Virus record (IMG/VR): IMGVR_UViG_3300036766_000988
Span: 1 to 64,000 of that record
Direction: 5' to 3' (one strand)
DNA: 64,000 nucleotides
A program made the position numbers and the translations under genes. Shown here piece after piece: positions 2,521 to 62,956 of the stretch (position 1 is its first letter; every line of letters starts with the position of its first letter). Below the pieces are notes generated by a model. The model worked only from the letters and a program-made list of their open reading frames with translations. It was not told the DNA's origin and did no database searches.

Positions 2521-2563
2521 GTGCATCTCCTCTACAACCGAGGAGGCGATAAGAGAAAAACGC

Positions 2564-12688: not shown

Positions 12689-12697
12689 GGTCTTCTC

Positions 12698-25328: not shown

Positions 25329-25535
25329 GTGGCCCGCGATGCCGAAGCCCTCCTTCAGGAGGCCTGCCGCCGCCTCGACGCTCTCATCGACGACGAGGCG
25401 TGCTCGTTCTCGGCTGACCGTCGGGATGGCGAAACCTGCCGTGAGTCCCGCACCCGCATCCAGGGCGTCCCCTGCGCCGGATGTGCCCAGTGCGAAGGCC
25501 GAGCTTTCCTGAAGCGCGTGAAGGAGCAGTCGTGA
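25329..25535 (+). CDS. Hypothetical Cys-rich protein
   Basis: GTG start just after the upstream TAG; CAGCAQC. Confidence 0.5.
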   Translation: MARDAEALLQEACRRLDALIDDEACSFSADRRDGETCRESRTRIQGVPCAGCAQCEGRAFLKRVKEQS

Positions 25536-25831
25536 GCGTCCACTCGATGATCCTGGTCAGTAGGGAATCTCCTGACCATCTCACCCAAGAAACTTGGGGT
25601 TTCGTGCTCATCGACGAGAAGCTCGTCCTGGACACCTACACGAAGGGCGTGAAGCCCACGAAGCGGCACAAGCCCGTGCGGCAGGTGTACTACTCGCGGC
25701 TCAACAGCCGCGATGCACCGTGCCCCGAGGCCGAAGTGCCGTGGCGTGAGGACGTGAACGCCGAAGCTCTCGCGCAGCTCCTCGCCCTGTTCAAGGTCGG
25801 TCGATGGAAGGCCGACTTCGGCCGCCGGTAG
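25532..25831 (+). CDS. Hypothetical protein
   Basis: GTGA overlap with the upstream stop; protein-like composition. Confidence 0.6.
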   Translation: MSVHSMILVSRESPDHLTQETWGFVLIDEKLVLDTYTKGVKPTKRHKPVRQVYYSRLNSRDAPCPEAEVPWREDVNAEALAQLLALFKVGRWKADFGRR

Positions 25832-25833
25832 AA

Positions 25834-25860
25834 GCTGAACCCCCGCCCTTGGAGGCGTAG
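25834..25860 (+). promoter_or_regulatory. Class A promoter GCTGAAC-N15-CGTAG
   Basis: Exact consensus; ATG 25868 is 7 nt downstream. Confidence 0.7.
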
Positions 25861-25867
25861 TACCCGC

Positions 25868-26146
25868 ATGAACTTCAAACCCAACCTCGCCAACGAGTTC
25901 GCCTACGCGACCGAGTGCAACCTCGCCACCCTCTCCGGCCTGTTGCTCAAGAAGCGCAGCCCCAAAAACGAGATCGAGCGGCAGACCAACATCTGTCTGC
26001 GGATGTTGGTCTGGTGTCGATTGGAGAAGGCCGTGATCGAGTGGGGCAGCCCGGTCTACAAGAACTTCGGACGCGTCGAGAAACTCGTGGCGGAGACGGA
26101 TCTTCCCACGGCGCTCAAACTCTGGGTCTTGGAACACAAGGCATGA
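25868..26146 (+). CDS. Hypothetical protein
   Basis: ORF behind a class A promoter. Confidence 0.65.
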   Translation: MNFKPNLANEFAYATECNLATLSGLLLKKRSPKNEIERQTNICLRMLVWCRLEKAVIEWGSPVYKNFGRVEKLVAETDLPTALKLWVLEHKA

Positions 26147-26391
26147 GCCAGCCAGACTGGGAAAACCGTTTCCGCGACGCAGCCTTCGTCGCCATCTGGA
26201 GTCGCTGGCAGACCGCTCGGGCCATGTGGCGCAAAGCCTGGTGGTTCGTCGAACGCGGCCAGGGGGGCTCGGATCCTGTCTACGACCCCCAACCCGAGCT
26301 GATCCAGGACTCAGAAAAACGCGCCGAGGCCACCGAATACCAAGCTGCTCGCTCGGCGTATCTGACCGAACTGAAGCGCTACCCGGTGTAG
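26143..26391 (+). CDS. Hypothetical protein
   Basis: MSQPDWENRF...; ATGA overlap. Confidence 0.55.
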   Translation: MSQPDWENRFRDAAFVAIWSRWQTARAMWRKAWWFVERGQGGSDPVYDPQPELIQDSEKRAEATEYQAARSAYLTELKRYPV

Positions 26392-26399
26392 ATCTTGGG

Positions 26400-26648
26400 G
26401 TGACCCCCAGAGAAAAATTCCTCCTGTTCGTCGGCACCTACGCCGGAGCCGTTTGTTCGAAGACCATCGCCTCCGTGGCCATCGCATGGGCTCGGCAAGT
26501 ACAGCCCAACATCTTCGAAACCCATCCCAACGCGGAAGAGTCTCTTGCTTTCGAGTTTGTCTCGTGGCAGGCGGGAGATCGACAACGTCCGGCATGGTTC
26601 CCGATGAGCGACGGAGAACGTGCCGTCTTGGGGGCTCCTCCCCGCTGA
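26400..26648 (+). CDS. Hypothetical protein
   Basis: GTG start 8 nt after the GGTGTAG motif. Confidence 0.5.
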   Translation: MTPREKFLLFVGTYAGAVCSKTIASVAIAWARQVQPNIFETHPNAEESLAFEFVSWQAGDRQRPAWFPMSDGERAVLGAPPR

Positions 26649-26670
26649 ACGAACAAGAAAGAGAACGTAG
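26644..26670 (+). promoter_or_regulatory. Class A promoter GCTGAAC-N15-CGTAG
   Basis: Exact consensus; ATG 26679 is 8 nt downstream. Confidence 0.7.
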
Positions 26671-26678
26671 CAGCTTTC

Positions 26679-27461
26679 ATGGAACGTGTGATCTTCATCG
26701 GAGACGTCCACGGATGTCTGGCAGAGCTGGTCGAGTTACTTGACCGCCTCAACCCCGCACCGGAGGACAGTCTCATCTTCCTCGGAGACCTGATCGACCG
26801 CGGCCCCGATCCCGTGGGTGTCGTGCGGTTCGTCCGCAACCTGAGACAGACCCTCAACATGAATACACCCGGCACGACCCTGCTGGGCAACCACGAAGAA
26901 AAGGCTCTTCGGTGGCACCGGCACGAGAATCGTCGAGCCGCCGACCCCAAGTACAAGAACCCGATGAAGAGGGTTCCTGAAGCTCGGCTGGCCGAGTGGC
27001 GTGGGCTCAATGCAGACGATCTGGAGTTCCTCGGGAGCTGTCCGCCTTACCTCGATCCTCTGCCGGACTGGTACGCCGTCCACGGAGGCTTCGTGCCTGG
27101 GAAGCAGCCCGGCCTCCAGAAGGTCGGAGAGATGATCCGGTGCCGCTGGGTCGACACCGAGGGACACCATGTCGGCATGATGGAGGGCAGCCTCGACATG
27201 CCTCCGGGGGCACGCCCCTGGATGGAGGCCTTCGACGGACCGTTCAACGTGGTCTGTGGCCACGCGGTTCATTCGCTCGTCGATCCTCGCATCGACCAAA
27301 CGACTTCGGGTTTCGAGGTTTGGTCGATCGATACGGGCTGTGTCTTCGGAGGACGTCTGACCGCTCTGGTGCTGGACCCCACACACCCCGACCGACGCGA
27401 GGTCGTTCAGGTTCAAGCCCGTCAGAAGTACGCCGAGCTTCGAGGGGGCGGCGTCGAATGA
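26679..27461 (+). CDS. Calcineurin-like metallophosphoesterase (PrpA/ApaH/Pnkp-phosphatase family)
   Basis: GDVHG, GDLIDRGP, GNHE, VHGG, GH and IDTGCVFGGRLTA motifs. Confidence 0.92.
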   Translation: MERVIFIGDVHGCLAELVELLDRLNPAPEDSLIFLGDLIDRGPDPVGVVRFVRNLRQTLNMNTPGTTLLGNHEEKALRWHRHENRRAADPKYKNPMKRVPEARLAEWRGLNADDLEFLGSCPPYLDPLPDWYAVHGGFVPGKQPGLQKVGEMIRCRWVDTEGHHVGMMEGSLDMPPGARPWMEAFDGPFNVVCGHAVHSLVDPRIDQTTSGFEVWSIDTGCVFGGRLTALVLDPTHPDRREVVQVQARQKYAELRGGGVE

Positions 27462-29672: not shown

Positions 29673-30212
29673 TCACGCACCTCCCTTCGAATCGAAGCAC
29701 ACGACACAGCGTGGCTCGTACGTTTCGGATCCCCCGACGAGAATGGCAGCGTCAGATCGAATCAAACGATGAGAACGGGTGCTGGGACCTCCACATTTCG
29801 AGCACCGACCCGAAAGCTTCACGACTTCATTCGCGAAAGCCATCAAGACAGGCATGGGCCCGAAAGGACGACCGAAACAATCCAGGTCGAGCCCTGCAAC
29901 GATAACCCGCACTCCAGCGCGAACCGCGTCGAGAAGGCGCGGAACAGCATCCGACGAAAGGAACTGGGCCTCATCGATGGCGATGATCTCGGCGCCCAAG
30001 GGTAGGTCAGGAGCATCAGGAGCGAGACACTTCGCCTCGATCTTCAACCCATCATGCGAGTGGATGAACTCATCCGCATGCCGGGTATCCGTCACCGGCT
30101 TGAAGGCAACAGTGCGGGAAAGGTCCCTGGCAAGCCGAACGCGGTAGATGAGCGTCTCGGTCTTGCCGCTGAACATCGGCCCGGCGATCACTTCGAGACG
30201 TCCTGCGTTCAT
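29673..30212 (-). CDS. tdk: Thymidine kinase
   Basis: GPMFSGKT, IDEAQF, AGLDLD, CSKC...YEPRCVVC. Confidence 0.95.
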   Translation of the reverse strand: MNAGRLEVIAGPMFSGKTETLIYRVRLARDLSRTVAFKPVTDTRHADEFIHSHDGLKIEAKCLAPDAPDLPLGAEIIAIDEAQFLSSDAVPRLLDAVRAGVRVIVAGLDLDCFGRPFGPMPVLMAFANEVVKLSGRCSKCGGPSTRSHRLIRSDAAILVGGSETYEPRCVVCFDSKGGA

Positions 30213-30343
30213 CTCAGTTGTCCCTGCGCACAAGTAGATCTGGGACTATTTGGAAGAAGCCTCGACGATCCGGGGCCAGAGAGCTTCTCGTAGGTCTGCC
30301 CACCTGCACGGATGCTGAGCAGCCCCTAGGCACCCTTTGGGTG

Positions 30344-31438
30344 CTACAGCATCGACTCCACGACCCTCATGCACAAAGCGTTGAGGGCGTGGATGTCCGA
30401 AGATCGGGGAAGAGACGAGAGCTTGTCTGCCTTCTCGATCCTGTGGGACTGAGCCTCGAACCACTCAGCGAGCTTCTCGAAATTCCAGGCTCCGGCACGG
30501 ATGCCGAGCAGCTCTTCGGCATCGTCACGTCGCACGTGAACCTGACCCGTCGTGAGGATCTCCTCGCAGCACCTGGAAAGACGAACCAGGTGCATCGCGT
30601 GTTTTGTGTCAAAGCCGAACTTCTCTTCGAGAGCTGCCCGCGCAGGATTGCGCTCCGTTTTCCACGTCTGGAACTGGATCCAGTTTCGGTGGGCAGCCCC
30701 ATATCGACGCTCCTGGTCAAGCAACTCGATGAAATTCGTCGTGAAGCCGATGTGCCGTGCTGCCGAAAGCCACACATGCTCGTCGAAAGAGTCCTCACCC
30801 CAAAGAGTGATCTCGGCAAGAAGCCGAAGAAACTCGTCCTTGATGGCCTGTCTCATACCCGGCTCGACACCTTCGAGTTCGTGCCATGACCATTTGTCGA
30901 GCTGCTTCTGGATGGCTGCCTGGGCTGCCGCAAGCTGATCAGCCGGGATGACAGTGCGCTCGGGAAGACCGAACTCTGCCCGCGTCGGAGGAGCCGCAAC
31001 GGGGTTGAGAAGCCAACGCCTATGCGTGAGGATGCGCTTCATCTGAGCGTGGGCGTACCCCTGGAACGTGTGCTTGACCTTCCGACTCAGAAAAAGGTGT
31101 CGGTTGTCGAGAAGCACTCGGGCAGGAGGCGTCACGAGAAGATGATCGGATTCATCCGTGTAGAGCAGCTCCAACACGTTCGGGTTGCACTCGGCAGCGA
31201 GCTTCAAGAACTTCTTGACCTCAAAGATCACGAGGTCGGGTTCCTTCTGCACGGCTTGCTCGAAAACCTGAGAAAACCCGAGGTAGTACTCTTTCGGAGC
31301 GATGGCGACGCCTCGAAGGTCGAGATCCGAAGTCGGTAGACTCGTCCCATAGGCATGAGATCCATGTCGAGTGACATAGATCGTCCGCTCGGGAAGCCAC
31401 GTGAGATTACCGGTGTAGATCTTCCAGTCGAAAGCCAT
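30344..31438 (-). CDS. Pol-beta-superfamily nucleotidyltransferase (YcgL/Nuc-transf-like)
   Basis: GSHAYGTSLPTSDLDLRG, NPNVLELL, FGFDTKHAMHLVRL. Confidence 0.9.
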   Translation of the reverse strand: MAFDWKIYTGNLTWLPERTIYVTRHGSHAYGTSLPTSDLDLRGVAIAPKEYYLGFSQVFEQAVQKEPDLVIFEVKKFLKLAAECNPNVLELLYTDESDHLLVTPPARVLLDNRHLFLSRKVKHTFQGYAHAQMKRILTHRRWLLNPVAAPPTRAEFGLPERTVIPADQLAAAQAAIQKQLDKWSWHELEGVEPGMRQAIKDEFLRLLAEITLWGEDSFDEHVWLSAARHIGFTTNFIELLDQERRYGAAHRNWIQFQTWKTERNPARAALEEKFGFDTKHAMHLVRLSRCCEEILTTGQVHVRRDDAEELLGIRAGAWNFEKLAEWFEAQSHRIEKADKLSSLPRSSDIHALNALCMRVVESML

Positions 31439-32115: not shown

Positions 32116-32388
32116 TCACCACCACTTCGTGGGGGATTGCGGACCTTCACCCTTGGCGCACCACGCATAGGCGTCGTAGCCAACGTAGTGGTCAGAACGG
32201 AGATGCGGGTAGGTGAACTCGACAGGCTCGTCCCAGCCCACGTGGCCGAGCCAGCCCTTGTCCGTGATGAGGAACCGTACATCGTTGAGGTTGGCGTGCA
32301 TCTCGACGAGAGTGGCCTCAATGGGACCGATGATGTGCCCGTCCCCGGCGCCGAACCAGACCTCGATATCCAAGACGTTCTCGCTCAT
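32116..32388 (-). CDS. Hypothetical protein
   Basis: MSENVLDIEVWFG; start directly after the upstream stop. Confidence 0.55.
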   Translation of the reverse strand: MSENVLDIEVWFGAGDGHIIGPIEATLVEMHANLNDVRFLITDKGWLGHVGWDEPVEFTYPHLRSDHYVGYDAYAWCAKGEGPQSPTKWW

Positions 32389-32389
32389 G

Positions 32390-33025
32390 TTACAGGGCCT
32401 CGCGGGCTCCTCGAAACCTAGAGGCTTCCAGAGGCTCGCGTTCGTACGCTCGCCGGAGGCCTTCACGCAGCTCGATCGTGTCCGTCCCGTCGTAGCGGAT
32501 GATGTTCGGATGCGCCTTGGAACCTCCGCTTGCGAAGTCCGCGTTCCACGGATGCGCGAGACAGATGACGAGACCACGCGGCCTCACCTTGAGCCACGTG
32601 AGGAAGTAGGGCGGAAAGTCGTCGAACAAGACCCGACCGTAAACGAGCGACTTCTGGCCGGTCACCGTGACGGTCGCGTCCGGGAGATGCTCGCAACACC
32701 ATTCGAGCTTCTCTCCCCAAGCGGGCCCGTTCTTCTGAGGTCCCTTGGTGAGCACATGAAGCCCGAATCCGAGCTGGCGAAGCTCCTCAACGACCTGGAA
32801 ACCCAACGGAAGGGGCTTGAGGTTGCGCCAAAAGCCGGGCTGGCGCTGAATCATCTTGCGGCGAGCCTCGACATGCGGGGGTTCACTGCCCGTCGAGTAC
32901 CGGTCCCCGTAGAGGGGCTCGTCAGGGCTTTGGAGCGACCGCATCTGGTTCCGCATCTCCGTGTCGTAGTCCGCCACGGTACCGTCGAGGTCGATGAGCG
33001 CTACCCGATCCTGTTCGTCTTCCAT
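32390..33025 (-). CDS. HAD 5'(3')-deoxyribonucleotidase (NT5C-like)
   Basis: DLDGTVADY, PGFWRNL, K..W, LFDDFP, HPWN. Confidence 0.88.
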   Translation of the reverse strand: MEDEQDRVALIDLDGTVADYDTEMRNQMRSLQSPDEPLYGDRYSTGSEPPHVEARRKMIQRQPGFWRNLKPLPLGFQVVEELRQLGFGLHVLTKGPQKNGPAWGEKLEWCCEHLPDATVTVTGQKSLVYGRVLFDDFPPYFLTWLKVRPRGLVICLAHPWNADFASGGSKAHPNIIRYDGTDTIELREGLRRAYEREPLEASRFRGAREAL

Positions 33026-33054
33026 GCTGTAAAGTACACCGAAAGTAATCCTAG

Positions 33055-33097
33055 AAACGCGAAACCCCCGCTGCCACCAAAGGCGCGAGGGTTGCGA
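33055..33097 (-). terminator. Hairpin/terminator after the ncRNA array
   Basis: CGCAACCCTCGC...GCGGGGGTTTCGCG followed by TTTC. Confidence 0.45.
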
Positions 33098-33102
33098 TGA
33101 AG

Positions 33103-33243
33103 TCGGCCGACAAGTTGTCGTCTAGACCTTGCGGGCAGCGTCCGACCTGAGAGTCATGTCTCAGCGTTCGGCGGGACAGGGTCGTTCACCCCTGGCGTCC
33201 CCGCTCCCATTTTGGCGATGTAGTCCAGACAGTATTCGGTCGA
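33103..33243 (-). ncRNA. Y-RNA-like unit 5
   Basis: 5' UCGACCGAAUACUGUCUGGACUACAU ... 3' GACAACUUGUCGGCCGA closing stem; downstream of Ro60. Confidence 0.7.
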
Positions 33244-33268
33244 GCAGGCAGCGTAAGCCGTGGAACGA

Positions 33269-33354
33269 GCACGGGCAAGGGTTGACGGTTAGGGCCATTT
33301 TAGAGGCCCGCCTTGTCTTAGTATGTAGACCCAATCGGCATCTGACCCCCGCAC
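33269..33354 (-). ncRNA. Y-RNA-like unit 4
   Basis: 5' GUGCGGGGGUCAGAUGCCGAUUGGGUCUACAU ... CCGUCAACCCUUGCCCGUGC. Confidence 0.6.
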
Positions 33355-33365
33355 CTAGATGCGGA

Positions 33366-33496
33366 AACCAGCAAAAGTTGACGGAGTCCGTTGGCGCCAC
33401 GTAGGACGCCTTGTGAGATTCAGGTCTTCTTCATGTATGGGAGTTCCCTTGGAAGATCGATTTTTAGATGTAGACCCTGCGGGCATTCCCCCGGTT
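33366..33496 (-). ncRNA. Y-RNA-like unit 3
   Basis: 5' AACCGGGGGAAUGCCCGCAGGGUCUACAU ... CCGUCAACUUUUGCUGGUU. Confidence 0.6.
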
Positions 33497-33520
33497 GCTT
33501 TCGGGAGACAAAAGGTGCCG

Positions 33521-33576
33521 AGTCAAAAAGTGACGTCTACTTCACCAGTGAGATAGTGCCACTCCGTTGTCCGACT
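33521..33576 (-). ncRNA. Y-RNA-like unit 2 (divergent)
   Basis: AGUCGGA...UUUGACU stem; GCACUAUCU in place of GGUCUACAU. Confidence 0.35.
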
Positions 33577-33604
33577 TAGAGTGTTGGATGGCTCGTGGAA
33601 GACA

Positions 33605-33632
33605 AGACTAAAGCAACTCGTAACCGTGTCAA
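33605..33632 (-). promoter_or_regulatory. Sigma70-like promoter inside the ncRNA array
   Basis: TTGACA-N16-TAGTCT. Confidence 0.5.
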
Positions 33633-33644
33633 GGAAAGAAAATC

Positions 33645-33707
33645 GGGGCAACAAGAAATGCTGAGTCGTTGTCGAAGGGTGATGTAGACCCAGACTGCAT
33701 TCGCCCC
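33645..33707 (-). ncRNA. Y-RNA-like unit 1
   Basis: 5' GGGGCGAAUGCAGUCUGGGUCUACAU ... GCAUUUCUUGUUGCCCC; contains the GNCGAANG bacterial Y-RNA motif. Confidence 0.7.
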
Positions 33708-33724
33708 AAACTTGTAGACGCGCA

Positions 33725-33750
33725 GGGGGTCTGCCATCTGACAGACCCCC
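33725..33750 (-). terminator. Strong hairpin after the TROVE gene
   Basis: Plus-strand GGGGGTCTG-ccatctga-CAGACCCCC inverted repeat; no U-tract. Confidence 0.5.
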
Positions 33751-33758
33751 CACACGGT

Positions 33759-35504
33759 TCACGTCATCGACTCGATGACCTCCACCCAGCTTGAAGCCGA
33801 GCCCGAGTGGAAGGACTTCACGACCTCGAACACCTGATCGGAGAAGCCGCCGACATTCAGGATGTCGTTCCTCGAAGGAGCGGGCGACGTGGTGTTCGGC
33901 TGTACGTCGTTGCACACGAGCCGTGCATCCGAACGGCCCTTCTTGATGAGGTCCCACTGACGGAGGGTCTCGGTCCTCGACCCACCCCAGTTACCGTACC
34001 TCGGCGAATCCATCCACGACTCGTTGTCCGAGACGTACATGGCGAGCGCCGGGCGGATACCCATGGTGGTGATGGCCGCGAGTGCCGCCGAGCAGTTGGT
34101 GCCGCCACATGGCAGCGCCGTGAGCTTCTGCGCGTTCGTCATGATCGAATCACGCGGGTTGAGACGAACGTCCGTGAGGGCCTTCGACTCGAACGGGATG
34201 ATGACCGCGTGCGGGTTCACCCGCAGCATCGAAGCCGCGATGACGGCTGCAACGTCGATGCAACGAACCTTCGACGTGTGCTGCTCGACCCGGCCGGTCT
34301 TCGGGTTCATCTGCATGCCCGTGATGGGCGAGTGCATGGAGCCCGAGATGTCCGGCATGATGACCACGACGTCATCGACGGTCGGAACGTTCTTGGTCGC
34401 GATCTCCATCGCGTCCTGGAGAGCATTCGTGATCTCGCGCGGCATCTCCGCGTTCATGTTGAGGTAGGCGACCAAGAGCTGGTACGGGAGAGCCCGTGCC
34501 TTCGAGATCGACTGCGCATCGGCAAGCTTGGCCGCAACCGCCTTCACGACGTCGGCGCTCTTGAACGCCCCCTTCTTGTTGAAGAGGTTGAGCCGCTGAC
34601 GAAGCGACTGCCACGACTGGCGCAGAGCCAGCTCCTGCCACTGCTCGACGCTGAGCGGCAGACCTTCGAGCATCTCGAAAGGCACCTTCGGGGTCTCCCC
34701 CTGCGGCTCCTTCTTGAAGCGCTCGTAATCCGCCACGACCGACGGAATTGCATCGGACACTACGAAATCGTTGCCCTCGAACTTCCCGGCGGTCTTGTCG
34801 AGCAGATAGCCGAAGAGAGCCGCGCGTTCGCGGGTCATCGGGTGCGGGTGAACGAGCGACACGATGTCCCCAAGGGACGGATCGTTGCCGATCGACTGGA
34901 AAAACACCTGCTCGTCGGTCTTGGTGTCGAACCAGCTACGAATGAGCCGACGCGGCGCCGTACCCAGGGACTTACGGCCCGCTTCGCCCGAGCGGACGAT
35001 CTGGACGAAGTTCTTGAGCATCTTGCCGTTGTCGATCACACGCGGGAACACGGCCCACACGATCTCGTTGAGACGCTCGACCTCCTCATGAGCCGCAGCG
35101 ATCTGGGCTTCGAGCGACACCGGGACGTCACGCTTCTCCGTGCGGAGAGCCGCACGCTGCTGAAGCAGAATCTCCTCGACCTTGTGTGCCTCAGCCACAC
35201 GACCCGAGAGAGTCGCGACGAGGAACGCGGGCATGTCCTTGAGGAAGCCCTTCTCACGGCTGTAGAGCGCGAGCTTCCCGATGAACTCGGGGTCGCACTG
35301 AGTCGTCAGCTCCTTCACCTTCGTGAGCTGATCCTCGGCCTTCGCGTAGAAGGTGTTGTTGAAGCAACCCGTCGCAGCGAGCTGCGCGAGGGCTTCCTTC
35401 GCCTTGAGCGAGTACGCCAACCCGCCCGCCTCGTTCTTCGTGTCCGCAGCCGGAGACTTCGCGGAAACGCCCTTCGCCCCCCTGAAAAGGCTCTTCGATG
35501 CCAT
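33759..35504 (-). CDS. rsr: Ro60/Rsr TROVE + vWA RNA-binding protein
   Basis: NEAGGLAY, LAATGCFNNTFY, ALPYQLLVAY, MIDAS DISGSM, GGTNCS, VSDNESW, VGGFSDQVF; GGAGG SD before MASKS. Confidence 0.93.
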   Translation of the reverse strand: MASKSLFRGAKGVSAKSPAADTKNEAGGLAYSLKAKEALAQLAATGCFNNTFYAKAEDQLTKVKELTTQCDPEFIGKLALYSREKGFLKDMPAFLVATLSGRVAEAHKVEEILLQQRAALRTEKRDVPVSLEAQIAAAHEEVERLNEIVWAVFPRVIDNGKMLKNFVQIVRSGEAGRKSLGTAPRRLIRSWFDTKTDEQVFFQSIGNDPSLGDIVSLVHPHPMTRERAALFGYLLDKTAGKFEGNDFVVSDAIPSVVADYERFKKEPQGETPKVPFEMLEGLPLSVEQWQELALRQSWQSLRQRLNLFNKKGAFKSADVVKAVAAKLADAQSISKARALPYQLLVAYLNMNAEMPREITNALQDAMEIATKNVPTVDDVVVIMPDISGSMHSPITGMQMNPKTGRVEQHTSKVRCIDVAAVIAASMLRVNPHAVIIPFESKALTDVRLNPRDSIMTNAQKLTALPCGGTNCSAALAAITTMGIRPALAMYVSDNESWMDSPRYGNWGGSRTETLRQWDLIKKGRSDARLVCNDVQPNTTSPAPSRNDILNVGGFSDQVFEVVKSFHSGSASSWVEVIESMT

Positions 35505-35600
35505 GGTACCCTCCTGCATGCGCCCCGGCCGAAGCCGAACCGCCAAAGTGCCCGCCTTCATGCGACCCGCTATGGGCCGCCAAACTGGCGAGCAGGGGTT

Positions 35601-36080
35601 CTATACACCAGGCTCGTTGAGACCGTCGAGATATTTTTCAACGACCCTCAAGGCCAGGGGGTCGTCCGCGTAGAGATACCGCTTCACCTTCCGGTACTTC
35701 TGGGGCGGACTTGGTACGGGGACCTTCGGCGGTTTCACATGCTTGACGGGCTTGGGCTTCTTGGGCGGCAAGACATGCTTCGGGGGGATCGGGGGATGAA
35801 GAGGAGCGGGCGGCGGTTCGCGAACGATCTCTGGTTTGTGAGGCTTTTTGGGCTTCCGCGGAAGATGAGGCTGCCCCGGATGACGATGCGGAGCTGGCTT
35901 TCCCTCCGTGTTGAGCTTCGAGGGCGGGATTTTCTGGTAAACCCCAGCCTCCTCCTGCAACGTCTCGGGAAGAACGTAGACGATCCGCTCCTTGTCCGTG
36001 TTGTAGACAGGGATCATGTTCTTCGGTCGCGTGTACTTCCCTTCCAGGAAGCGTGCGATGACACGATGAACGAGATCCAT
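35601..36080 (-). CDS. Pro/Lys-rich protein with RVIARFL tags
   Basis: N-terminal LVHRVIARFL, C-terminal LALRVVEKYL. Confidence 0.6.
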   Translation of the reverse strand: MDLVHRVIARFLEGKYTRPKNMIPVYNTDKERIVYVLPETLQEEAGVYQKIPPSKLNTEGKPAPHRHPGQPHLPRKPKKPHKPEIVREPPPAPLHPPIPPKHVLPPKKPKPVKHVKPPKVPVPSPPQKYRKVKRYLYADDPLALRVVEKYLDGLNEPGV

Positions 36081-36103
36081 GCTCTCCAGAGTCTACCAAA
36101 AGA

Positions 36104-36907: not shown

Positions 36908-36981
36908 TGGAGTGTCGTACGGGGATCGAACCCGTGTACCCGGATTTAGAGTTCGGTGCCTGACCTCTAGGCTAACGACAC
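36908..36981 (-). tRNA. Amber-suppressor tRNA (anticodon CUA)
   Basis: Cloverleaf: acceptor GUGUCGU/ACGACAC, D-arm GCCU-AGAGGUC-AGGC, anticodon arm CCGAA-CUCUAAA-UCCGG (one A-C mismatch), T-arm ACGGG-UUCGAUC-CCCGU, U73-CCA. Confidence 0.9.
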
Positions 36982-36985
36982 GAGA

Positions 36986-37285
36986 TTACCGACCGATTGC
37001 CACAAGAGCTTCATCCACAGCCGTGTCGGCCAGGATAAAGCTCCGCATGGCCCGAACCCACCCAGCATTCCGAGCGAACTGAATGAACGCCGAAATTTCC
37101 TCGGGCCCCACGGTGGAACAACGCCGTTCGGCAAATTCCACCGTGAGGATGTGACCAGGGCTGGTCTCATCCTCGATGAGGACTCGAAGTCGAGGTCCGA
37201 TACTAGGCTTCAAAGCCCGAACCCTGAAGCGGTACGGAACTCCGTTGACCTTGATCTGTCGGGTGCCCCTTCGAGGCATCGTCAT
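36986..37285 (-). CDS. Hypothetical protein
   Basis: MPRRGTRQIKVNGVPYRFRV...GPEEISAFIQFARNAGW; ATGA overlap. Confidence 0.65.
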   Translation of the reverse strand: MTMPRRGTRQIKVNGVPYRFRVRALKPSIGPRLRVLIEDETSPGHILTVEFAERRCSTVGPEEISAFIQFARNAGWVRAMRSFILADTAVDEALVAIGR

Positions 37286-37680
37286 GCAGCTTCAGTACAC
37301 CGAAGAGCGAGCGGAAGACTACTGACAAGACGACGAGCTGCGGGTTCAAGAGCAAACGCCGTCAACTCGTTCCCCCGGTCGGGCTCATGGAACGGCGCCA
37401 CCGAGAAGCCCCGGTCGACTGCCCTGTTGAAGAGGCCCCAAAGAGCCTCCTCGTTGGGCACGGCAAGCATGGCGAGGTAGTTCGAGCGCGTGTACCACGC
37501 CTGATCGATTTCCGGGTGATGAGCCACGAACTCCCGCAAGGCGTGCGCCGTCTGGATGGCTTGCACCCCCGGAGGGAGATCTTCCCGCGTCACGAGGAAA
37601 AGTTTGTCGGTCGGGCCCACAACAAGACTCCGTGAACCCAGATGAGCACCCATGTTCTCCATGTCACGTCGTCCCCCCAT
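37282..37680 (-). CDS. Peptidyl-tRNA hydrolase, Pth2-like
   Basis: KLFLVTREDLPPGVQAIQTAHA...L.VPNEEAL...FHEPDRGNELTAFAL...LPLAL; start uncertain. Confidence 0.8.
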   Translation of the reverse strand: MGGRRDMENMGAHLGSRSLVVGPTDKLFLVTREDLPPGVQAIQTAHALREFVAHHPEIDQAWYTRSNYLAMLAVPNEEALWGLFNRAVDRGFSVAPFHEPDRGNELTAFALEPAARRLVSSLPLALRCTEAA

Positions 37681-38260
37681 CGGAGTCCTCGTCGTACTCG
37701 TTATCGTCTTCCGCCATAACCCTGCGTTCGTCGGCGCACTTGCGGAAGTGCATTGAAACCGCCCCGATGATGGTTTCGGGAAGACCCGCCGTCTTCAGGC
37801 TCTCCTTCCAACCCACCTCGGAACGATCCCCTGCGATCCAGTGCTTTTCCCCGATGATGAACTTGGGCGGATCACTGTAGACGTTCCCGCCAGGCGTCTC
37901 CAAGTAGGGCCACAACTCCAGCGGGCTGTCATTGCAACAACCGCAGTTATGCCGAAGATCGAAGCGGTCGACTTTCGTGTTCACGGACTTCGAATAGTAG
38001 GCCACCTTGTTCCAGCGGCCCGTAAACTGCCGAAGATCCGGGTACTCCTTGAGAAGGGACTCGATCTGGTCCGCTTGGGCAAGCGCCGCTGCGGCTTCCT
38101 TGCGAAGCTTCTCGATTGCGCGTGGAACGGCAAGTCTAGCATCCTCCTCGACCTTCTTTTGCCATTCCTCAGCGGCCTTGCGACGCGACGCTTCCGCAGC
38201 CGCTTGCTGCTCGGGGGTGGGCTCGGATGTCAGGGCCTTCAGAAGCTTCTTGCTGAGCAT
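37664..38260 (-). CDS. Hypothetical protein (HNCGCC motif)
   Basis: MLSKKLLK start coupled to the upstream stop. Confidence 0.65.
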   Translation of the reverse strand: MLSKKLLKALTSEPTPEQQAAAEASRRKAAEEWQKKVEEDARLAVPRAIEKLRKEAAAALAQADQIESLLKEYPDLRQFTGRWNKVAYYSKSVNTKVDRFDLRHNCGCCNDSPLELWPYLETPGGNVYSDPPKFIIGEKHWIAGDRSEVGWKESLKTAGLPETIIGAVSMHFRKCADERRVMAEDDNEYDEDSDGGTT

Positions 38261-39459
38261 CACGAGAGCACCTGCTTCGCATATGCGAAGGCCTCGGCCA
38301 TTGCAGCCGCCGAATGCTCGAACCACTTATCCTCGACGTGCTTGCCATCCCGATAGATGACGAGCTTGATCGGGCCGGTCTCACAGGCCCATTCGAGGTC
38401 AATGGTGCTCTTGGCCTTGTAGTGGATCCGGCGGCACCACCGCTTCTCCCGACCGGTGAAGTGCGGACACCAGTTGTCGTACGTGACCCCGAGGCCCGAA
38501 TGATCTTCGGGCGACAATGCAGGATCCTTCACCAGCTCGATGTACGCCAGGTAAAGCGGATCGGTGGCCTTGAAGTCCTCCTTCCACTGCTCGTACTTGC
38601 GATTGCCTTCCTCTCGGTCGGCCCGGACCTTCTTCTCCTGCTCGGAAACCCACTCCTCGACGAGCACGAGTTTCATACCCTCGCGGCGGAAGGTCTTGGT
38701 GGCGGCATCCACCCTCGGCTTCTGCTTACAGTGATCGGGGCAGTCGTCGTGATCGCACTCCGCCCGTTCCGTCTGGTAGCACTTGATCGTCCCATCGGGC
38801 TCGATGGTGGGGTACTTGCTGTCCTCTTCGACCCCTCCCTCAGCCTCGATCTCCGGCCAACCCTCCATGGGGTTGGAGAAGTCGAAGAAACGGAACTCGT
38901 ACGGGCAGGCCCAGTGGCAGCCACAGACCACCAACATCTGGGATCCCGCATCGAACGTGGAGTCTGCCCAGCAGAAGCCGAAACCTTCCTCCGCCTCTTC
39001 GGGCAGGAAATCCCGACGCTTGCCGGTATCCAGCTCGATGACCGTCTGCCCTTGATAGTCCTCGCCGCAGACGAGGTAATCATGACCGTTCGGATGCCCT
39101 TCGACGAACGTGTACGGGAACGCAGAGTAGTTCCTGTTCACGACCGCGATGGGCGCATCCGAGCCGAGCTTGAAGACCTTCCCCTGGATGTAAGACCAGC
39201 ATCCAGGCTTCGTCTCGTAGCTCGCGATGACAAGCTTGTACTGCCCGCTCGAACTCAGCTTCTCCCAACGATCTTTCGTGCTCTCGTTCGCGGGAACGAA
39301 AACAGCGTCCTTCTCGGCCCGATAGTACGCCTTGAGCAGACCCGGCTGAACGAGGGCCTTGAGACGCTTTCGCTCCTCGTAAGCACCCGGCTCGTGGCTA
39401 TCGAAGTCGAGGTAGGCCTGCAACTCGGGGGTCATCCCCTTGAAGGTCGTGTTCATCAC
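38260..39459 (-). CDS. Hypothetical protein (~400 aa)
   Basis: GTGA overlap with the upstream gene; GCHWACPY motif. Confidence 0.7.
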   Translation of the reverse strand: MMNTTFKGMTPELQAYLDFDSHEPGAYEERKRLKALVQPGLLKAYYRAEKDAVFVPANESTKDRWEKLSSSGQYKLVIASYETKPGCWSYIQGKVFKLGSDAPIAVVNRNYSAFPYTFVEGHPNGHDYLVCGEDYQGQTVIELDTGKRRDFLPEEAEEGFGFCWADSTFDAGSQMLVVCGCHWACPYEFRFFDFSNPMEGWPEIEAEGGVEEDSKYPTIEPDGTIKCYQTERAECDHDDCPDHCKQKPRVDAATKTFRREGMKLVLVEEWVSEQEKKVRADREEGNRKYEQWKEDFKATDPLYLAYIELVKDPALSPEDHSGLGVTYDNWCPHFTGREKRWCRRIHYKAKSTIDLEWACETGPIKLVIYRDGKHVEDKWFEHSAAAMAEAFAYAKQVLS

Positions 39460-39836
39460 GCGACCTCCGTACGGACGTAGGGCTTCTTCTCCCGCACCGG
39501 AGCCGCGATAGCCCCCTCGGGGTTGGCGAGCCACTGCTCGACCTCGGGGCTCGGCTTCGTCGCCCACGAACTCTTGGCCACCTCGGCGAAGCCAGGGATG
39601 TGCGTCCCGAGGATCGTCGTGATGTACCGTGCGTTGGGCGGGTTGTGGTTGACGACCGTGCCGTCCGGCATCACCTGCTGCCGGGTCTGGCGCTCGACGC
39701 GGCGGTACGGGAAACCCCGCACGAACGCCCACGCGAGGTTGCCCTCACGGCCTCCGGTGTTGGCACGGATGGCCCGGTGGATCGCCTTCACTTGCGCCTT
39801 CTCGTCGGCGCTCATCTGCTTGTAGTTCTCGAACAT
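39456..39836 (-). CDS. Hypothetical protein, first gene under the leader attenuator
   Basis: AAGGAG SD; LAWAFVRGFPYRRVE. Confidence 0.7.
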   Translation of the reverse strand: MFENYKQMSADEKAQVKAIHRAIRANTGGREGNLAWAFVRGFPYRRVERQTRQQVMPDGTVVNHNPPNARYITTILGTHIPGFAEVAKSSWATKPSPEVEQWLANPEGAIAAPVREKKPYVRTEVA

Positions 39837-40382: not shown

Positions 40383-40928
40383 TCAGCCGCTCAGGAACCG
40401 GGCGGTGACCCGAAGCGCTGTAGTATCCTCGGGACTGCACGCGATCTGCATCGGAGTTGTGCTGACGTGATGGATCTTGAACTCAACGCTCTTCGTCTTG
40501 AGAAACGTGTCGAAAGCCCCGACATGTTCAGCACGGTCTTCCCACATCTCAACCTGCTTTGTTGTCTCTGACAAGAGAGCAGCGATCGTCTTGAGCTTGA
40601 AAGGGAGCGTGTCATCCCCGTTAGAAAAATGGGTCTCATCGAACCGGAGGCCCACCTCAGCCAACAGAGCTTGGACCCGAGTCCGCAGCTTCGGAGGCCT
40701 GCCTGTAATCATGATCGCATAGACACTAGGATTGGAAATGGACTTGCGTGCCGCTGCCACCGTAGAAGCCACCCACCACTCAGCGTCAGGCTTTTCTGGC
40801 ACGCATGGAGGCGAGAGACTCTCAAGCCGACCCCACCAGCCCTGCGTCCACCACTCAGGTTTCGCAGGCGAGCGAAAAAGCGTCCCATCGAAGTCGAAGA
40901 CATGCAGGGTCTCGATAGTCACGGGCAT
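40383..40928 (-). CDS. HAD phosphatase, Swiss-Army-Knife RNA-repair type
   Basis: LHVFDFDGTLFRSP, MITGR, FK, MWEDR..H; C-terminal ALRVTARFL. Confidence 0.8.
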   Translation of the reverse strand: MPVTIETLHVFDFDGTLFRSPAKPEWWTQGWWGRLESLSPPCVPEKPDAEWWVASTVAAARKSISNPSVYAIMITGRPPKLRTRVQALLAEVGLRFDETHFSNGDDTLPFKLKTIAALLSETTKQVEMWEDRAEHVGAFDTFLKTKSVEFKIHHVSTTPMQIACSPEDTTALRVTARFLSG

Positions 40929-42181
40929 GCACCAGGGGGTCGAGGGTCAGCTTCACCTTTCCAGTAGGTCGTAACAAGAAGCATCGAATGGCCCTTCGGA
41001 CGCACGACGATCGAGAGGCCACTCGCCGAATCCACCCACTCAAAGCTTGTGCCCCGAGCCCAGCCTTCGGTCACCCGCTGGTACATTTGGTTCTTCTGCG
41101 ACTTCCAGTCGTTGAGCGCCTTCAAGAGAGAACGAATGCCCGCTCGAACAAGCGGAACCGTGATGCCTCGTAGATCCATCCGATACTGCGCGTGTGGAGT
41201 GATGAGGATGTTGTCGATCGACCCGATCCCATGTTCTCGATCAGGGCTGTAGATCTTCGCGGCATCTGGGTTCTGTACTTTCTCACCGTGCTCGACGTCC
41301 TCAACGAGGTCATCACGAACAGCCGGATTCCGTACTTCCTTCTCGATGCGCTCGACCACATGGCAAGGTCCGCCGGGATAGCCTAGGGGAGGATCAAGAT
41401 CCGCCTGACGGTCCAACGCCGAGGTCTTGGGTGCCACCCACGCACCCAATTCGATCGTCAGAGCCACCTGGACTTTCGATGCTGGGATGTCCCCCAGATA
41501 TGCAATTGATCCAATGCGCGCAAGGCTCTTGGTGGGATCGGTTTCGCGACTATCTTCATCGGCCGCGACCTTCGAACCATCAATGCCGCGTACTTCTAGA
41601 ACCACTGCCGTTCCGTGGTGAGCTTTCGCAGCATCCAGCGCAGCGAACTTCGCCATCGAGAGCTGGGTCGTCAAATACACAGCTTCGGCTCGGCCTACGC
41701 CAGCGCCAGACCCCACCCCATAAGCAGGAACTACGTTGGTGTGGCTGCGAGGTCGTAGTCCCTCGACCAAAATACGAGAAGCCGCCGTAGAACTCGTCCC
41801 ATGATAGAAAGTCAGATGCTCCCAGTTCACCGAAGGTGTGTGGGGTTCCCCCAATAGCTGAGAGACAGGAATCCACGGCCCGTCAAACTTGATGACGAAC
41901 TCGTGTAGCTCGGGGTACTCCCGCACCATCTCACGAAGCGCCTTGTGGAACCCTGCGTGATGTTCTGTGGCACCATCAACCATGAGATTGCGCCAGTCGT
42001 TCTCACGCGCAAGGCTGAGCGCCGCATCCCAAGCCCAACCACCACGGAGGTACCCCCCAAGCTCCCAAGAACCTGCATCGTCCCCGTGGAAAGAGCCGTG
42101 ATACTTCTTGCCCTTACGTGGCAACGAGGCGGCCTGCCTGGCGAGAAACCGGGCGACGACTCGAAGGGCCAGCGCGTTCAT
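40919..42181 (-). CDS. Multidomain protein with an ADP-ribosyltransferase/Tpt1-like domain and a C-terminal HA..RM..R.I (RelE/DUF4258-like) domain
   Basis: FYHGTS...ILVEGLRP...VYLT...VVLEV; TPHAQYRMDLRGIT; N-terminal LRVVARFL. Confidence 0.6.
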   Translation of the reverse strand: MNALALRVVARFLARQAASLPRKGKKYHGSFHGDDAGSWELGGYLRGGWAWDAALSLARENDWRNLMVDGATEHHAGFHKALREMVREYPELHEFVIKFDGPWIPVSQLLGEPHTPSVNWEHLTFYHGTSSTAASRILVEGLRPRSHTNVVPAYGVGSGAGVGRAEAVYLTTQLSMAKFAALDAAKAHHGTAVVLEVRGIDGSKVAADEDSRETDPTKSLARIGSIAYLGDIPASKVQVALTIELGAWVAPKTSALDRQADLDPPLGYPGGPCHVVERIEKEVRNPAVRDDLVEDVEHGEKVQNPDAAKIYSPDREHGIGSIDNILITPHAQYRMDLRGITVPLVRAGIRSLLKALNDWKSQKNQMYQRVTEGWARGTSFEWVDSASGLSIVVRPKGHSMLLVTTYWKGEADPRPPGACP

Positions 42182-62852: not shown

Positions 62853-62870
62853 ACTGCGTCACTACACCGG

Positions 62871-62956
62871 CGGAGGCAGAGGGATTCGAACCCCCGGTGG
62901 GTATTACCCACGACTGCTTTCAAAACAGTAGGCATAAACCGCTCGCCCATACCTCC
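62871..62956 (-). tRNA. tRNA-Ser (UGA)
   Basis: Acceptor GGAGGUA/UGCCUCC, ACUGU-UUUGAAA-GCAGU, long variable arm, GGGGG-UUCGAAU-CCCUC, G73; followed by CCG, not CCA. Confidence 0.92.

What the first reader, a model, noticed from the sequence alone, without database searches (positions are those of the whole stretch)
33103..35504. Phage Ro60 gene followed by a tandem array of 4-5 modular Y-RNA-like ncRNAs
Seen: the ~730-bp gap below the TROVE gene holds units with a constant 5' strand (GAAUGCAGUCUGGGUCUACAU, GAAUGCCCGCAGGGUCUACAU, AGAUGCCGAUUGGGUCUACAU, GAAUACUGUCUGGACUACAU), a related 3' strand (CAAC/UUUC...UUG) that pairs with the 5' end, and unrelated internal cargo, giving units of about 56-141 nt. 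I see no tRNA-like T-loop (GUUCGA) in the cargo, unlike YrlA. An internal TTGACA promoter is present. Known: Y RNAs bind Ro60 through a stem formed by their 5' and 3' ends and tether effectors such as PNPase through the other domain. Inference: the phage encodes a panel of Ro60 RNPs with interchangeable effector, decoy or guide modules.
Basis: partly seen in the sequence, partly recalled or inferred. Interest (0 to 1): 0.85.

Follow-up and report, generated by a model that had tools for sequence, protein, structure and literature searches.

The report
Phage Ro60 gene with four Y-RNAs
A jumbo-phage gene for the RNA-binding ring protein Ro60 is followed by four small RNA genes that carry the known bacterial Y-RNA docking site for Ro60 but lack the usual tRNA-like part. 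The same layout occurs in many other phages and bacteria, so this is a real but fairly ordinary member of a known system.

Summary
The minus-strand ORF 33759-35504 is a Ro60 (TROVE + vWA) protein. The 733-nt gap below it holds four units, not five, on the same strand: U1 33707-33645, U2 33496-33366, U3 33348-33273 and U4 33243-33103.

Each unit has the Ro60-binding module of bacterial YrlA Y RNAs:
- a closing stem P1 ending in CGA/UCG
- an internal loop, AUGC on the 5' side and ...CUUG on the 3' side
- a 7-9 bp stem P2 with a conserved G.U pair
- a loop that starts UACAU

A covariance model built only from other phages' units puts these four at the top of the whole window (E = 1e-11, 2e-5, 0.04, 0.13). 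In 147 distinct related units all 14 modelled pairs covary. All 196 model hits in about 100 Ro60-centred loci lie on the Ro60 strand. Rfam-grade YrlA RNAs sit in the same kind of array elsewhere.

The window's units have no T-arm and no Rfam YrlA hit, so they are minimal, YrlB-like Y RNAs. U2 and U3 are divergent. The supposed fifth copy is the 3' strand of U4's P2. The TTGACA hexamer has no usable -10 element.

Ro60 binding and the idea of interchangeable effector modules remain inference. Verdict: a new member of a known kind, of moderate interest.

The parts
33759..35504 (-). Ro60 / TROVE-vWA protein gene (581 aa), with its own AGGAGGG ribosome-binding site just upstream of the ATG at 35504
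   Evidence: Pfam vWA_Ro60 at 1.2e-9, TROVE weak. PDB Rsr 2NVO at E = 6e-9 and phiLo Ro60 at 5e-8. 41% identical to Mx1 TROVE protein. In the alignment of 11 relatives M1 and A2 are invariant, as is the MIDAS-type D385-x-S387-x-S389.
33720..33755 (-). 17-bp hairpin that starts at the last base of the Ro60 stop codon; no U-tract follows it. Possibly an mRNA 3' stabiliser or a processing site
   Evidence: MFE -33.5 kcal/mol, z = -6.4, matched by 0 of 200 shuffles. Coordinates.
33645..33707 (-). U1, a canonical minimal Y-RNA-like unit. P1 GGGGCGA/UUGCCCC; AUGC; P2 CUGGGUC/GACUCAG with a G.U pair; 19-nt loop UACAUCACCCUUCGACAAC; 3' internal loop CAUUUCUUG. A U-rich tail (GAUUUUCUUUCC) follows. Contains GGCGAAUG, an exact match to GNCGAAN0-1G
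   Evidence: R1 51.6 bits, E = 1e-11 over the window. The unconstrained MFE reproduces P1 and P2, z = -2.6. Coordinates.
33366..33496 (-). U2, a divergent unit. P1 AACCGG(GGGA)/(UUUU)G-CUGGUU; AUGC; P2 GCAGGGUC/GACUCCGU with one A.C mismatch and the same inner GGGUC/GACUC as U1; insert of about 84 nt; 3' loop CAACUUUUG. The motif reads GGGGAAUG, with C replaced by G
   Evidence: R1 14.1 bits, E = 0.13 over the window and 1.5e-3 over the gap. Folding alone does not single it out, z = 0.0. Coordinates.
33273..33348 (-). U3, a divergent unit of the CAGAUGC variant also seen in L009. P1 GGGUCAG/CUUGCCC with one mismatch; P2 CGAUUGGGUC/GGCCCUAACCG with a mismatch and a bulge; 31-nt loop. A competing GGGCC/GGCCC hairpin is possible
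   Evidence: R1 15.9 bits, E = 0.04 over the window and 4.8e-4 over the gap. z = -0.8. CAGAUGC units with CUG... closing strands occur in L009. Coordinates.
33103..33243 (-). U4, a canonical module with a long insert. P1 UCGACCGA/UCGGCCGA with one A.C mismatch; AUAC; 9-bp P2 UGUCUGGAC/GUCUAGACG; insert of about 95 nt predicted as two hairpins, with no T-loop or D-loop; 3' loop ACAACUUG
   Evidence: R1 28.3 bits, E = 2e-5. The unconstrained MFE reproduces P1 and P2, z = -2.35. Coordinates.
33500..33641 (-). 142-nt spacer between U1 and U2. It contains the TTGACA hexamer at 33632-33627. No recognisable unit and no unusual fold
   Evidence: No R1 hit. z = +0.2. No promoter-like site found.
33058..33096 (-). 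GC-rich hairpin followed by UUUCGCGUUUCU, after U4 and before the NT5C gene. A candidate terminator for the array
   Evidence: MFE -25.7 kcal/mol, z = -2.2.

Best explanation
The gap below the phage Ro60 gene encodes four small non-coding RNAs of the bacterial Y-RNA (YrlA/YrlB) lineage.

**Architecture.** In each RNA the 5' and 3' ends pair to form stem P1. P1 is followed by a conserved asymmetric internal loop, with AUGC on the 5' side and about 9 nt ending C/U-U-U/C-G on the 3' side. Next comes a second stem, P2, with a conserved G.U pair, and then a loop that starts UACAU. This P1 / loop / P2 / UACAU module is the docking site for Ro60. It includes the GNCGAAN0-1G motif that Chen et al. 2014 proposed as the Rsr recognition site. 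The variable part sits in the P2 loop: 19 nt in U1, 31 nt in U3, and about 84 and 95 nt in U2 and U4.

**Likely mode of action (inferred).**
- The array is probably transcribed with or just after the Ro60 mRNA and cut into single RNAs. Units lie 17-29 nt apart, and a 17-bp hairpin separates the ORF from U1.
- Each RNA is probably stabilised by binding Ro60.
- As shown for other Y RNAs, the bound RNA would gate Ro60's central cavity. Depending on its insert, it could also tether Ro60 to a partner such as host PNPase for RNA surveillance or decay during infection.
- This fits a neighbourhood rich in tRNA- and RNA-repair-linked genes.

**Shown here:** homology of the module, covariation of its stems, and linkage to Ro60 in position and strand. 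**Inferred:** transcription, processing, Ro60 binding and the downstream function.
For: 1. The Rfam YrlA consensus aligned to sister units shows the same 5' strand (CgaAUGC + 7-bp stem + CUAc) and the same 3' strand (AcUuGucGcc) as the window units.
2. Model R1, trained without any window sequence, finds exactly these four sites as its top hits in 128 kb of search space. On the gap alone it gives E = 1e-13 to 1.5e-3.
3. Covariation is strong. In 147 distinct non-window units 91% of cells are paired. All 14 pairs show compensatory changes, and 604 cells changed on both sides against 181 +/- 12.5 in shuffles. Controls with the partners slid by 1-3 columns pair in only 36-55% of cells (similar).
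4. Linkage to Ro60 is consistent. All 143 hits and all 196 hits in Ro60-centred loci are on the Ro60 strand. A cruder script finds 357 same-strand units against 21 on the opposite strand, with 119 of 160 loci holding at least one unit and 63 holding at least three.
5. Rfam YrlA hits above the gathering score of 69 bits lie inside such arrays in L312, L313, L275, L247, L188, L287 and L268.
6. U1 and U4 fold into P1 + P2 without constraints, with z = -2.6 and -2.35.
7. The gene is a genuine Ro60.
8. Published work establishes the background. Y RNAs are encoded within 4 kb of rsr on the same strand in 254 bacteria and 22 phages, each species examined has at least two Y RNAs, and some are plain hairpins (PMC4201824). 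Thermus phage phiLo Ro60 binds two phage-encoded Y-like RNAs and host PNPase (PMC12135203).
Against: - There is no expression or binding data, and the host is unknown.
- Rfam YrlA gives no hit in the gap even at E <= 10.
- None of the four units has the tRNA-like domain that defines YrlA.
- U2 and U3 score weakly (14-16 bits), deviate in the GNCGAA motif, have imperfect P1 and P2 stems, and show no thermodynamic signal. They could be decaying copies.
- The nearest viral relative (L087, 52% identical Ro60) has only degenerate units. No orthologous array was found, so the specific inserts cannot be tested for covariation.
- A4 and A2 were aligned to the model's structure, which favours pairing. 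The slid and shuffled controls only partly offset this.
Confidence: 0.8

Rival explanations
1. The units are cis-acting elements of the Ro60 mRNA's 3' untranslated region, not free-standing RNAs. They would be Ro60 binding sites that give the protein feedback control over its own message, or protective structures against 3' exonucleases.
For: U1 begins only 52 nt after the stop codon. No convincing promoter precedes any unit. In many relatives the first unit starts 20-50 nt after the Ro60 stop.
Against: - In other genomes the same units lie upstream of Ro60 (L003; L045) or 3-7 kb away among tRNA genes (L024 relative to L004). A 3'-UTR role cannot explain these.
- Characterised relatives (YrlA and YrlB of M. 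smegmatis) are cut from a precursor into stable RNAs (PMC4201824).
- A 17-bp hairpin and, after U1, a U-tract separate the ORF from the array.
Confidence: 0.08
2. The array is partly or wholly a decaying remnant. On this view the units are former YrlA genes that lost their tRNA-like domains, are no longer functional, and keep the conserved strands only through recent ancestry.
For: - U2 and U3 have mismatched stems, altered GNCGAA motifs and no folding signal.
- The closest viral relative, L087, has only degenerate units.
- The 64%-identical relative L166 still has a T-arm in its first unit.
Against: - U1 and U4 keep every conserved feature, including the G.U pair and intact P1 and P2 stems.
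- Short units without a T-arm are common and well conserved: 120 of 123 distinct units of 90 nt or less lack a T-loop, and 14 of 63 multi-unit loci have none.
- The model built from these short units shows strong covariation.
Confidence: 0.1
3. The repeats act at the DNA level, as promoters, terminators, protein operator sites or recombination sites, and the apparent RNA structure is incidental.
For: The strands are short and conserved and recur at intervals. A TTGACA hexamer is present, and the two hairpins at either end of the array resemble terminators.
Against: - Both stems covary in all 14 pairs while their sequence changes freely.
- The strand bias relative to Ro60 is complete.
- The module is homologous to that of a known RNA family.
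- No promoter-like sites were found, and terminator-like sites are no more frequent than in shuffled sequence.
Confidence: 0.02

Closest known systems
YrlA (Y RNA-like A; Rfam RF02553) of Salmonella, Mycobacterium and mycobacteriophages
   Same: The Ro-binding module is the same: P1 ending CGA/UCG, a 5' AUGC internal loop, a 3' A.A.CUUG loop, a 7-bp P2 and then CUAC. The genomic rule is the same: next to Ro60, on the same strand, often in several copies. Bona fide YrlA genes sit in sister arrays.
   Different: The window units have no tRNA-like domain (no T-arm or D-arm) and get no Rfam YrlA hit even at E <= 10. In U1 and U3 the P2 helix is simply capped by a loop of 19-31 nt. In U2 and U4 it carries unrelated inserts.
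YrlB (S. Typhimurium, M. smegmatis) and Yrn2 (D. radiodurans), the second, hairpin-type bacterial Y RNAs
   Same: These are Ro60-bound RNAs encoded beside YrlA/Yrn1. [quoted passage not shown] This is the architecture of U1 and U3.
   Different: Chen et al. found YrlB homologues only within Salmonella serovars and noted that such RNAs eluded bioinformatic discovery. The units here belong to a large family that can be aligned across phages and bacteria.
Yrl1 and Yrl2 of Thermus phage phiLo with phiRo60 (PMC12135203)
   Same: A phage-encoded Ro60 with adjacent phage-encoded Y-like RNAs that have a 5'-3' stem and a CGAA-containing bulge. Binding to the phage Ro60 and assembly with host PNPase were shown experimentally.
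   Different: There are two RNAs upstream of the gene rather than four downstream. phiRo60 is only distantly related (phmmer E = 5e-8 over about 80 residues). Homology of the RNAs was not tested here.
Metazoan Y RNAs (hY1, hY3, hY4, hY5)
   Same: A small family of modular RNAs, four in humans. A terminal stem binds Ro60, and a variable loop region is thought to recruit other factors.
   Different: The conserved helix differs (GGUCCGA with a bulged C), transcription is by Pol III, and there is no detectable sequence homology. Rfam Y_RNA gave no hit.

Membership tests
Bacterial/phage Y RNA (broad class: Ro60-associated ncRNA) | Encoded within a few kb of a Ro60 orthologue, on the same strand | tested here: met
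   All four units lie 52-656 nt downstream of the Ro60 stop codon, on the minus strand. In the family as a whole, 196 of 196 model hits are on the Ro60 strand.
Bacterial/phage Y RNA (broad class: Ro60-associated ncRNA) | 5' and 3' ends pair into a stem that carries the conserved motif GNCGAAN0-1G | tested here: met
   U1 has GGCGAAUG, an exact match, within P1 and the internal loop. U4 has ACCGAAUA, U2 GGGGAAUG and U3 GUCAGAUG, which are variants. P1 pairing is present in all four and imperfect in U2-U4. P1 covaries across the family with 96% of cells paired.
Bacterial/phage Y RNA (broad class: Ro60-associated ncRNA) | Physically bound and stabilised by Ro60; accumulates as a discrete small RNA | not testable with these tools
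   This needs RIP or EMSA and Northern blots or small-RNA sequencing. No transcript data are available for this uncultured phage.
YrlA (Rfam RF02553) | Scores at or above the family's gathering threshold (69 bits) | tested here: not met
   No YrlA hit in 32900-33900 even at E <= 10, and none in the window at the gathering threshold.
YrlA (Rfam RF02553) | Internal tRNA-like domain with a T-arm (GGUUCGAAUCC-type) and a D-arm | tested here: not met
   No T-loop motif in any unit (sequence). ARAGORN and the Rfam tRNA model find nothing in the gap. The predicted U4 insert is two plain hairpins.
YrlA (Rfam RF02553) | Ro-binding module: P1, AUGC loop, 7-bp P2, CUAC, and a 3' loop ending CUUG | tested here: met
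   Compare the consensus with the unit anatomy.
Ro60 / Rsr protein | TROVE (HEAT-repeat ring) domain | tested here: inconclusive
   Pfam TROVE scores 19.1 bits, below its cut-off of 23. However, phmmer aligns residues 146-568 to Rsr 2NVO at E = 6e-9 and residues 21-101 to phiLo Ro60. No structure prediction was run.
Ro60 / Rsr protein | C-terminal vWA domain with a MIDAS motif | tested here: met
   Pfam vWA_Ro60 scores 38.8 bits against a cut-off of 27.7. D385, S387, S389, T456 and D493 are invariant in 11 relatives.
tRNA or tRNA-like gene | Cloverleaf recognised by ARAGORN or Rfam RF00005 | tested here: not met
   The only tRNAs in the window are at 36908-36981 and 62869-62956.

The most novel reading that the evidence does not exclude
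The short units (about 57-80 nt: the Ro-binding module plus a variable loop) may form a distinct, so far uncatalogued class of mini-Y RNAs. Jumbo phages and some bacteria carry them in tandem arrays of up to 8-12 copies. They could serve as a combinatorial adaptor set in which each loop or insert directs the phage Ro60, with host PNPase or other enzymes, to a different RNA or protein. One possible purpose is to counter host RNA-targeting or other defences, as hinted by the Ro60-like gp130 of phage Bas63, which counters the Ppl system (bioRxiv 10.1101/2024.10.10.617714).
Probability: 0.2. Interest if true: 0.7.

Novelty: new member of a known kind. Interest (0 to 1): 0.4.

Why it matters
This adds a clear case of a jumbo phage carrying its own Ro60 together with a set of Y RNAs. 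It also shows that the Ro-binding module alone, without the tRNA-like domain, is a widespread and strongly covarying RNA that Rfam's YrlA model misses.

Chen et al. 2014 noted that the non-tRNA-like partners of bacterial Ro60 eluded bioinformatic discovery. The covariance model built here finds them by the hundred, in phages and in bacteria. That gives a simple route to cataloguing them and to asking what the variable loops do.

For this window the practical gain is a correct annotation: four ncRNA genes, in a stretch where ORF callers would otherwise place spurious small ORFs such as 33129-33404 and 33359-33556.

Tried and rejected
- **Rfam scans.** The window at gathering thresholds and the gap at E <= 10 gave no Y_RNA or YrlA hit. 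The only hit was a chance MIR918 match on the post-stop hairpin.
- **Nucleotide search.** blastn of 32300-36100 against 50,697 phage records found no match.
- **A fifth unit.** Rejected. The 26-mer at 33144-33119 is the 3' strand of U4's P2.
- **Internal promoter.** TTGACA at 33632-33627 has at best TAGTCT 16 nt downstream. The scan found no promoter-like site.
- **Alternative distal 3' end for U2.** A closing strand near 33266-33253 that would nest U3 inside U2 was considered by hand. It was dropped because the model and the repeated CCGUCAAC-YYUUGC element favour the proximal 3' half.
- **Orthologous arrays for unit-level covariation.** The closest Ro60 relatives are L166 (64%), L167 (59%) and L087 (52%). 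Their arrays differ in unit number and type, and L167 has none downstream. No inference about specific inserts was possible.
- **Insert similarity and antisense targets.** Nothing beyond chance was found. The longest exact matches are 11-13 nt in the window. Only the conserved 5' motif matches in 2.3 Mb of related loci.
- **Stop-codon recoding.** Stop-to-stop frame statistics are uninformative in this GC-rich sequence.
Full report
**What is in the sequence**

The window is part of IMG/VR contig IMGVR_UViG_3300036766_000988, a 252-kb phage contig. On the minus strand, ORF 33759-35504 encodes a 581-aa Ro60 homologue.
- Pfam vWA_Ro60 scores 38.8 bits against a cut-off of 27.7. Pfam TROVE is weak at 19.1 bits against 23.
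- phmmer matches D. radiodurans Rsr (2NVO) at E = 6e-9 over residues 146-568, and Thermus phage phiLo Ro60 at 5e-8.
- The closest named phage protein is the TROVE protein of Myxococcus phage Mx1, 41% identical over the full length.
- An alignment of 11 relatives keeps the start M1-A2 and a MIDAS-type D385-x-S387-x-S389 invariant.

The next minus-strand gene, an NT5C-type nucleotidase, starts at 33025. That leaves a 733-nt gap.

**The repeated units**

The exact 10-mer GGGTCTACAT occurs three times in 64 kb, all in this gap.

Reading the minus strand against the Rfam YrlA consensus shows what they are. That consensus appeared when sister units in locus L003 were scanned. It reads cggCgaAUGC.uuggGgaaCUAc ... 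uucCccaaAaAcUuGucGccg, with this structure:
- P1, 6-7 bp, ending CGA/UCG
- an internal loop, AUGC on the 5' side and about 8 nt ending CUUG on the 3' side
- P2, 7 bp
- CUAC at the start of the inner region

The window units have exactly this module (coordinates):
- **U1, 33707-33645.** P1 GGGGCGA/UUGCCCC; AUGC; P2 CUGGGUC/GACUCAG; 19-nt loop starting UACAU; 3' loop CAUUUCUUG.
- **U4, 33243-33103.** P1 UCGACCGA/UCGGCCGA; AUAC; 9-bp P2 UGUCUGGAC/GUCUAGACG; insert of about 95 nt; 3' loop ACAACUUG.
- **U2, 33496-33366.** The same elements, but P1 is displaced or mismatched and the GNCGAA motif is altered.
- **U3, 33348-33273.** As for U2. Its CAGAUGC variant also occurs in L009, where it closes with CUG....

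The repeat finder's fifth copy, at 33144-33119, is the 3' strand of U4's P2 and not a unit.

**Is it more than chance?**

I built covariance model R1 from 39 short units taken only from other phage contigs (A1). Run over the whole window on both strands without filters, its four best hits are U1, U4, U3 and U2, at 51.6, 28.3, 15.9 and 14.1 bits (E = 1e-11, 2e-5, 0.04, 0.13). The fifth hit is at E = 0.5 and is just a GC hairpin. Restricted to the gap, the E-values are 1e-13, 2e-7, 5e-4 and 1.5e-3.

U1 and U4 also fold into P1 + P2 with no constraint, at z = -2.6 and -2.35. U2 and U3 do not stand out thermodynamically. I therefore treat U1 and U4 as secure, and U2 and U3 as probable but divergent.

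**Comparative evidence**

An exact-pattern scan of IMG/VR for the 5' strand returned 72 stretches. Two protein-based scans returned 80 viral and 80 metagenomic loci centred on relatives of this Ro60.
- R1 finds 143 hits and 196 hits in these Ro60-centred loci, and every one is on the Ro60 strand.
- A cruder script counts 357 same-strand units against 21 on the opposite strand. At least one unit is present in 119 of 160 loci and at least three in 63.
- Arrays often begin 20-50 nt after the Ro60 stop codon (L171, L188, L035). They can also lie upstream (L003, L045) or a few kb away among tRNA genes (L024 relative to L004).
- On the model-derived alignment of 147 distinct non-window units, 91% of cells pair and all 14 pairs show compensatory changes. 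Cells changed on both sides number 604, against 181 +/- 12.5 in shuffles. Sliding the partners by 1-3 columns drops pairing to 36-55%. The first alignment gave a similar result.
- One P2 pair is mostly G.U (92 of 147 sequences). U1, U2 and U4 retain it.

The alignment was fitted to the structure, which inflates pairing. The size of the effect and the free variation of the P1 sequence still make an RNA structure the only reasonable reading.

**Link to known Y RNAs**

In sister arrays some members reach Rfam's own YrlA threshold of 69 bits: L312 (two), L313, L275, L247, L188 (two), L287 and L268, at 69-82 bits. Others in L003 and L009 reach 16-46 bits. These long members carry T-arms such as GGUUCGAAUCC.

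Among 316 distinct script-defined units, 123 are 90 nt or shorter, and 120 of those have no T-loop. Of the 193 longer ones, 123 have one. Arrays with no T-arm unit at all are not rare: 14 of 63 loci with at least three units. The window's lack of a T-loop is therefore normal variation within the family.

The same layout of Ro60 followed by 2-6 units also occurs in bacterial assemblies, some of them contigs of 1-6 Mb. Examples are Sphingomonas spp., Erythrobacter ani, Albitalea terrae and Chitinimonas sp.; Nannocystis sp. RBIL2 has the array, but no Ro60 gene lies within its fetched stretch.

Published work already reports the following:
- YrlA-like RNAs lie next to Ro60 in 254 bacteria and 22 phages, within 4 kb and on the same strand.
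- The motif GNCGAAN0-1G is the proposed recognition site.
- The three species examined experimentally each have at least two Y RNAs, and each has one that is a plain hairpin (YrlB, Yrn2).
- Such partners eluded bioinformatic discovery (PMC4201824).
- A phage Ro60 binding two phage Y-like RNAs and host PNPase was shown for Thermus phage phiLo (PMC12135203).

**How it most likely works**

Shown here: the module is homologous to YrlA's, its stems covary, and it is tied to Ro60 by position and strand.

Inferred:
- The four RNAs are probably made from one or two precursors. U2, U3 and U4 are 17 and 29 nt apart. A 17-bp hairpin (33755-33720, z = -6.4) starts at the last base of the stop codon. A U-rich tract follows U1, and a hairpin plus U-rich run follows U4.
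- They are probably trimmed to the P1 stem and stabilised by Ro60.
- As for other Y RNAs, they would gate Ro60's cavity and, through their inserts, link it to partners such as PNPase.

The gene neighbourhood fits RNA surveillance or repair:
- an RlaP nucleotidyltransferase (30344-31438)
- a PTH2 peptidyl-tRNA hydrolase (37282-37680)
- a HAD domain of the type found in 'Swiss Army Knife' RNA-repair proteins (40383-40928)
- an ATP-dependent ligase (43587-44873)
- a tRNA with a CUA anticodon (36908-36981)

A preprint reports that the Ro60-like gp130 of phage Bas63 counters the Ppl defence system (10.1101/2024.10.10.617714), so a counter-defence role is possible.

**What is not supported**

The scan finds no promoter for the TTGACA hexamer. 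The inserts of U2 and U4 match nothing in 2.3 Mb of related loci. No complementarity beyond 11-13 nt exists within the window. The guide or decoy idea therefore has no support so far. No orthologous array close enough for unit-level covariation was found. L166 (64% identical Ro60) has different units, one with a T-arm, and L087 (52%) has only degenerate ones.

**Verdict**

The Y-RNA reading is supported, while the functional elaboration remains inference. The feature fails the membership test for YrlA proper, having no tRNA-like domain and no Rfam hit. It fits the broader Y-RNA class and resembles YrlB and Yrn2. It is a new member of a known kind. What is modestly new is that the minimal form belongs to a large family that a model can find, often in long tandem arrays in jumbo phages.

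Noticed in passing
window 36908-36981 (-): A tRNA with anticodon CUA, which would read the amber stop codon. ARAGORN labels it 'Pyl' and Rfam tRNA scores it at 56.8 bits. It lies 1.4 kb upstream of Ro60 on the same strand and may indicate TAG suppression or recoding in this phage.
   Followed up: partly
window 35601-36080 (-) and 33759-35600 (-): The upstream 159-aa ORF ends in TAG and is in the same frame as the Ro60 ORF, with 32 sense codons between them. Amber read-through would fuse the two. Ro60 nevertheless has its own AGGAGGG ribosome-binding site, and its start (M1-A2) is conserved in 11 relatives, so independent initiation is expected.
   Followed up: partly
window 25355-27046 (-), 2063-3862 (-), 11858-13081 (+): Pairs of long same-frame open stretches, each at least 120 codons, are separated by a single TAG. 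These are candidates for in-frame amber codons. The GC-rich sequence also gives many such pairs across TGA, so this is not decisive.
   Followed up: no
window 30344-31438 (-), 37282-37680 (-), 40383-40928 (-), 43587-44873 (-), 26679-27461 (+): Genes linked to RNA repair or tRNA function cluster around the Ro60 locus: an RlaP nucleotidyltransferase, a PTH2 peptidyl-tRNA hydrolase, a HAD_SAK_1 domain, an ATP-dependent ligase and a metallophosphoesterase. A thymidine kinase (29673-30233) and an NT5C nucleotidase (32390-33025) are also nearby.
   Followed up: partly
window 33720-33755 (-): A perfect 17-bp hairpin starts at the last base of the Ro60 stop codon, with no U-tract (z = -6.4). Relatives (Mx1, L087, L166) also have a hairpin at this position. 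It may be an mRNA 3' end protector or an RNase III-type processing site.
   Followed up: partly
L009 6039-6405 (also in L114): A phage-encoded tmRNA (Rfam 108.7 bits) sits between Ro60 and an array of at least eight Y-like units. In several relatives (L004, L007, L008, L013) Ro60 is embedded in long tRNA gene arrays.
   Followed up: no
L100 10614-11104: Four short Y-like units repeat at an exact 142-nt period, and three have identical model scores. This looks like a recent tandem duplication and shows how the arrays may grow.
   Followed up: no
L273 (Nannocystis sp. RBIL2), L275/L280 (Sphingomonas spp.), L287 (Erythrobacter ani), L313 (Albitalea terrae), L303 (Chitinimonas sp.): Bacterial genome assemblies carry arrays of 3-5 of the same units. 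In all but L273, whose fetched stretch holds no Ro60 gene, a Ro60 of the same clade (37-47% identical) lies immediately upstream. The layout is therefore not specific to phages. Whether these loci are prophages was not checked.
   Followed up: partly
window 40919-42181 (-) and 38260-39732 (-): Two large ORFs (420 and 490 aa) next to the HAD_SAK_1 and PTH2 genes have no Pfam match. They may be unrecognised RNA-repair components.
   Followed up: no
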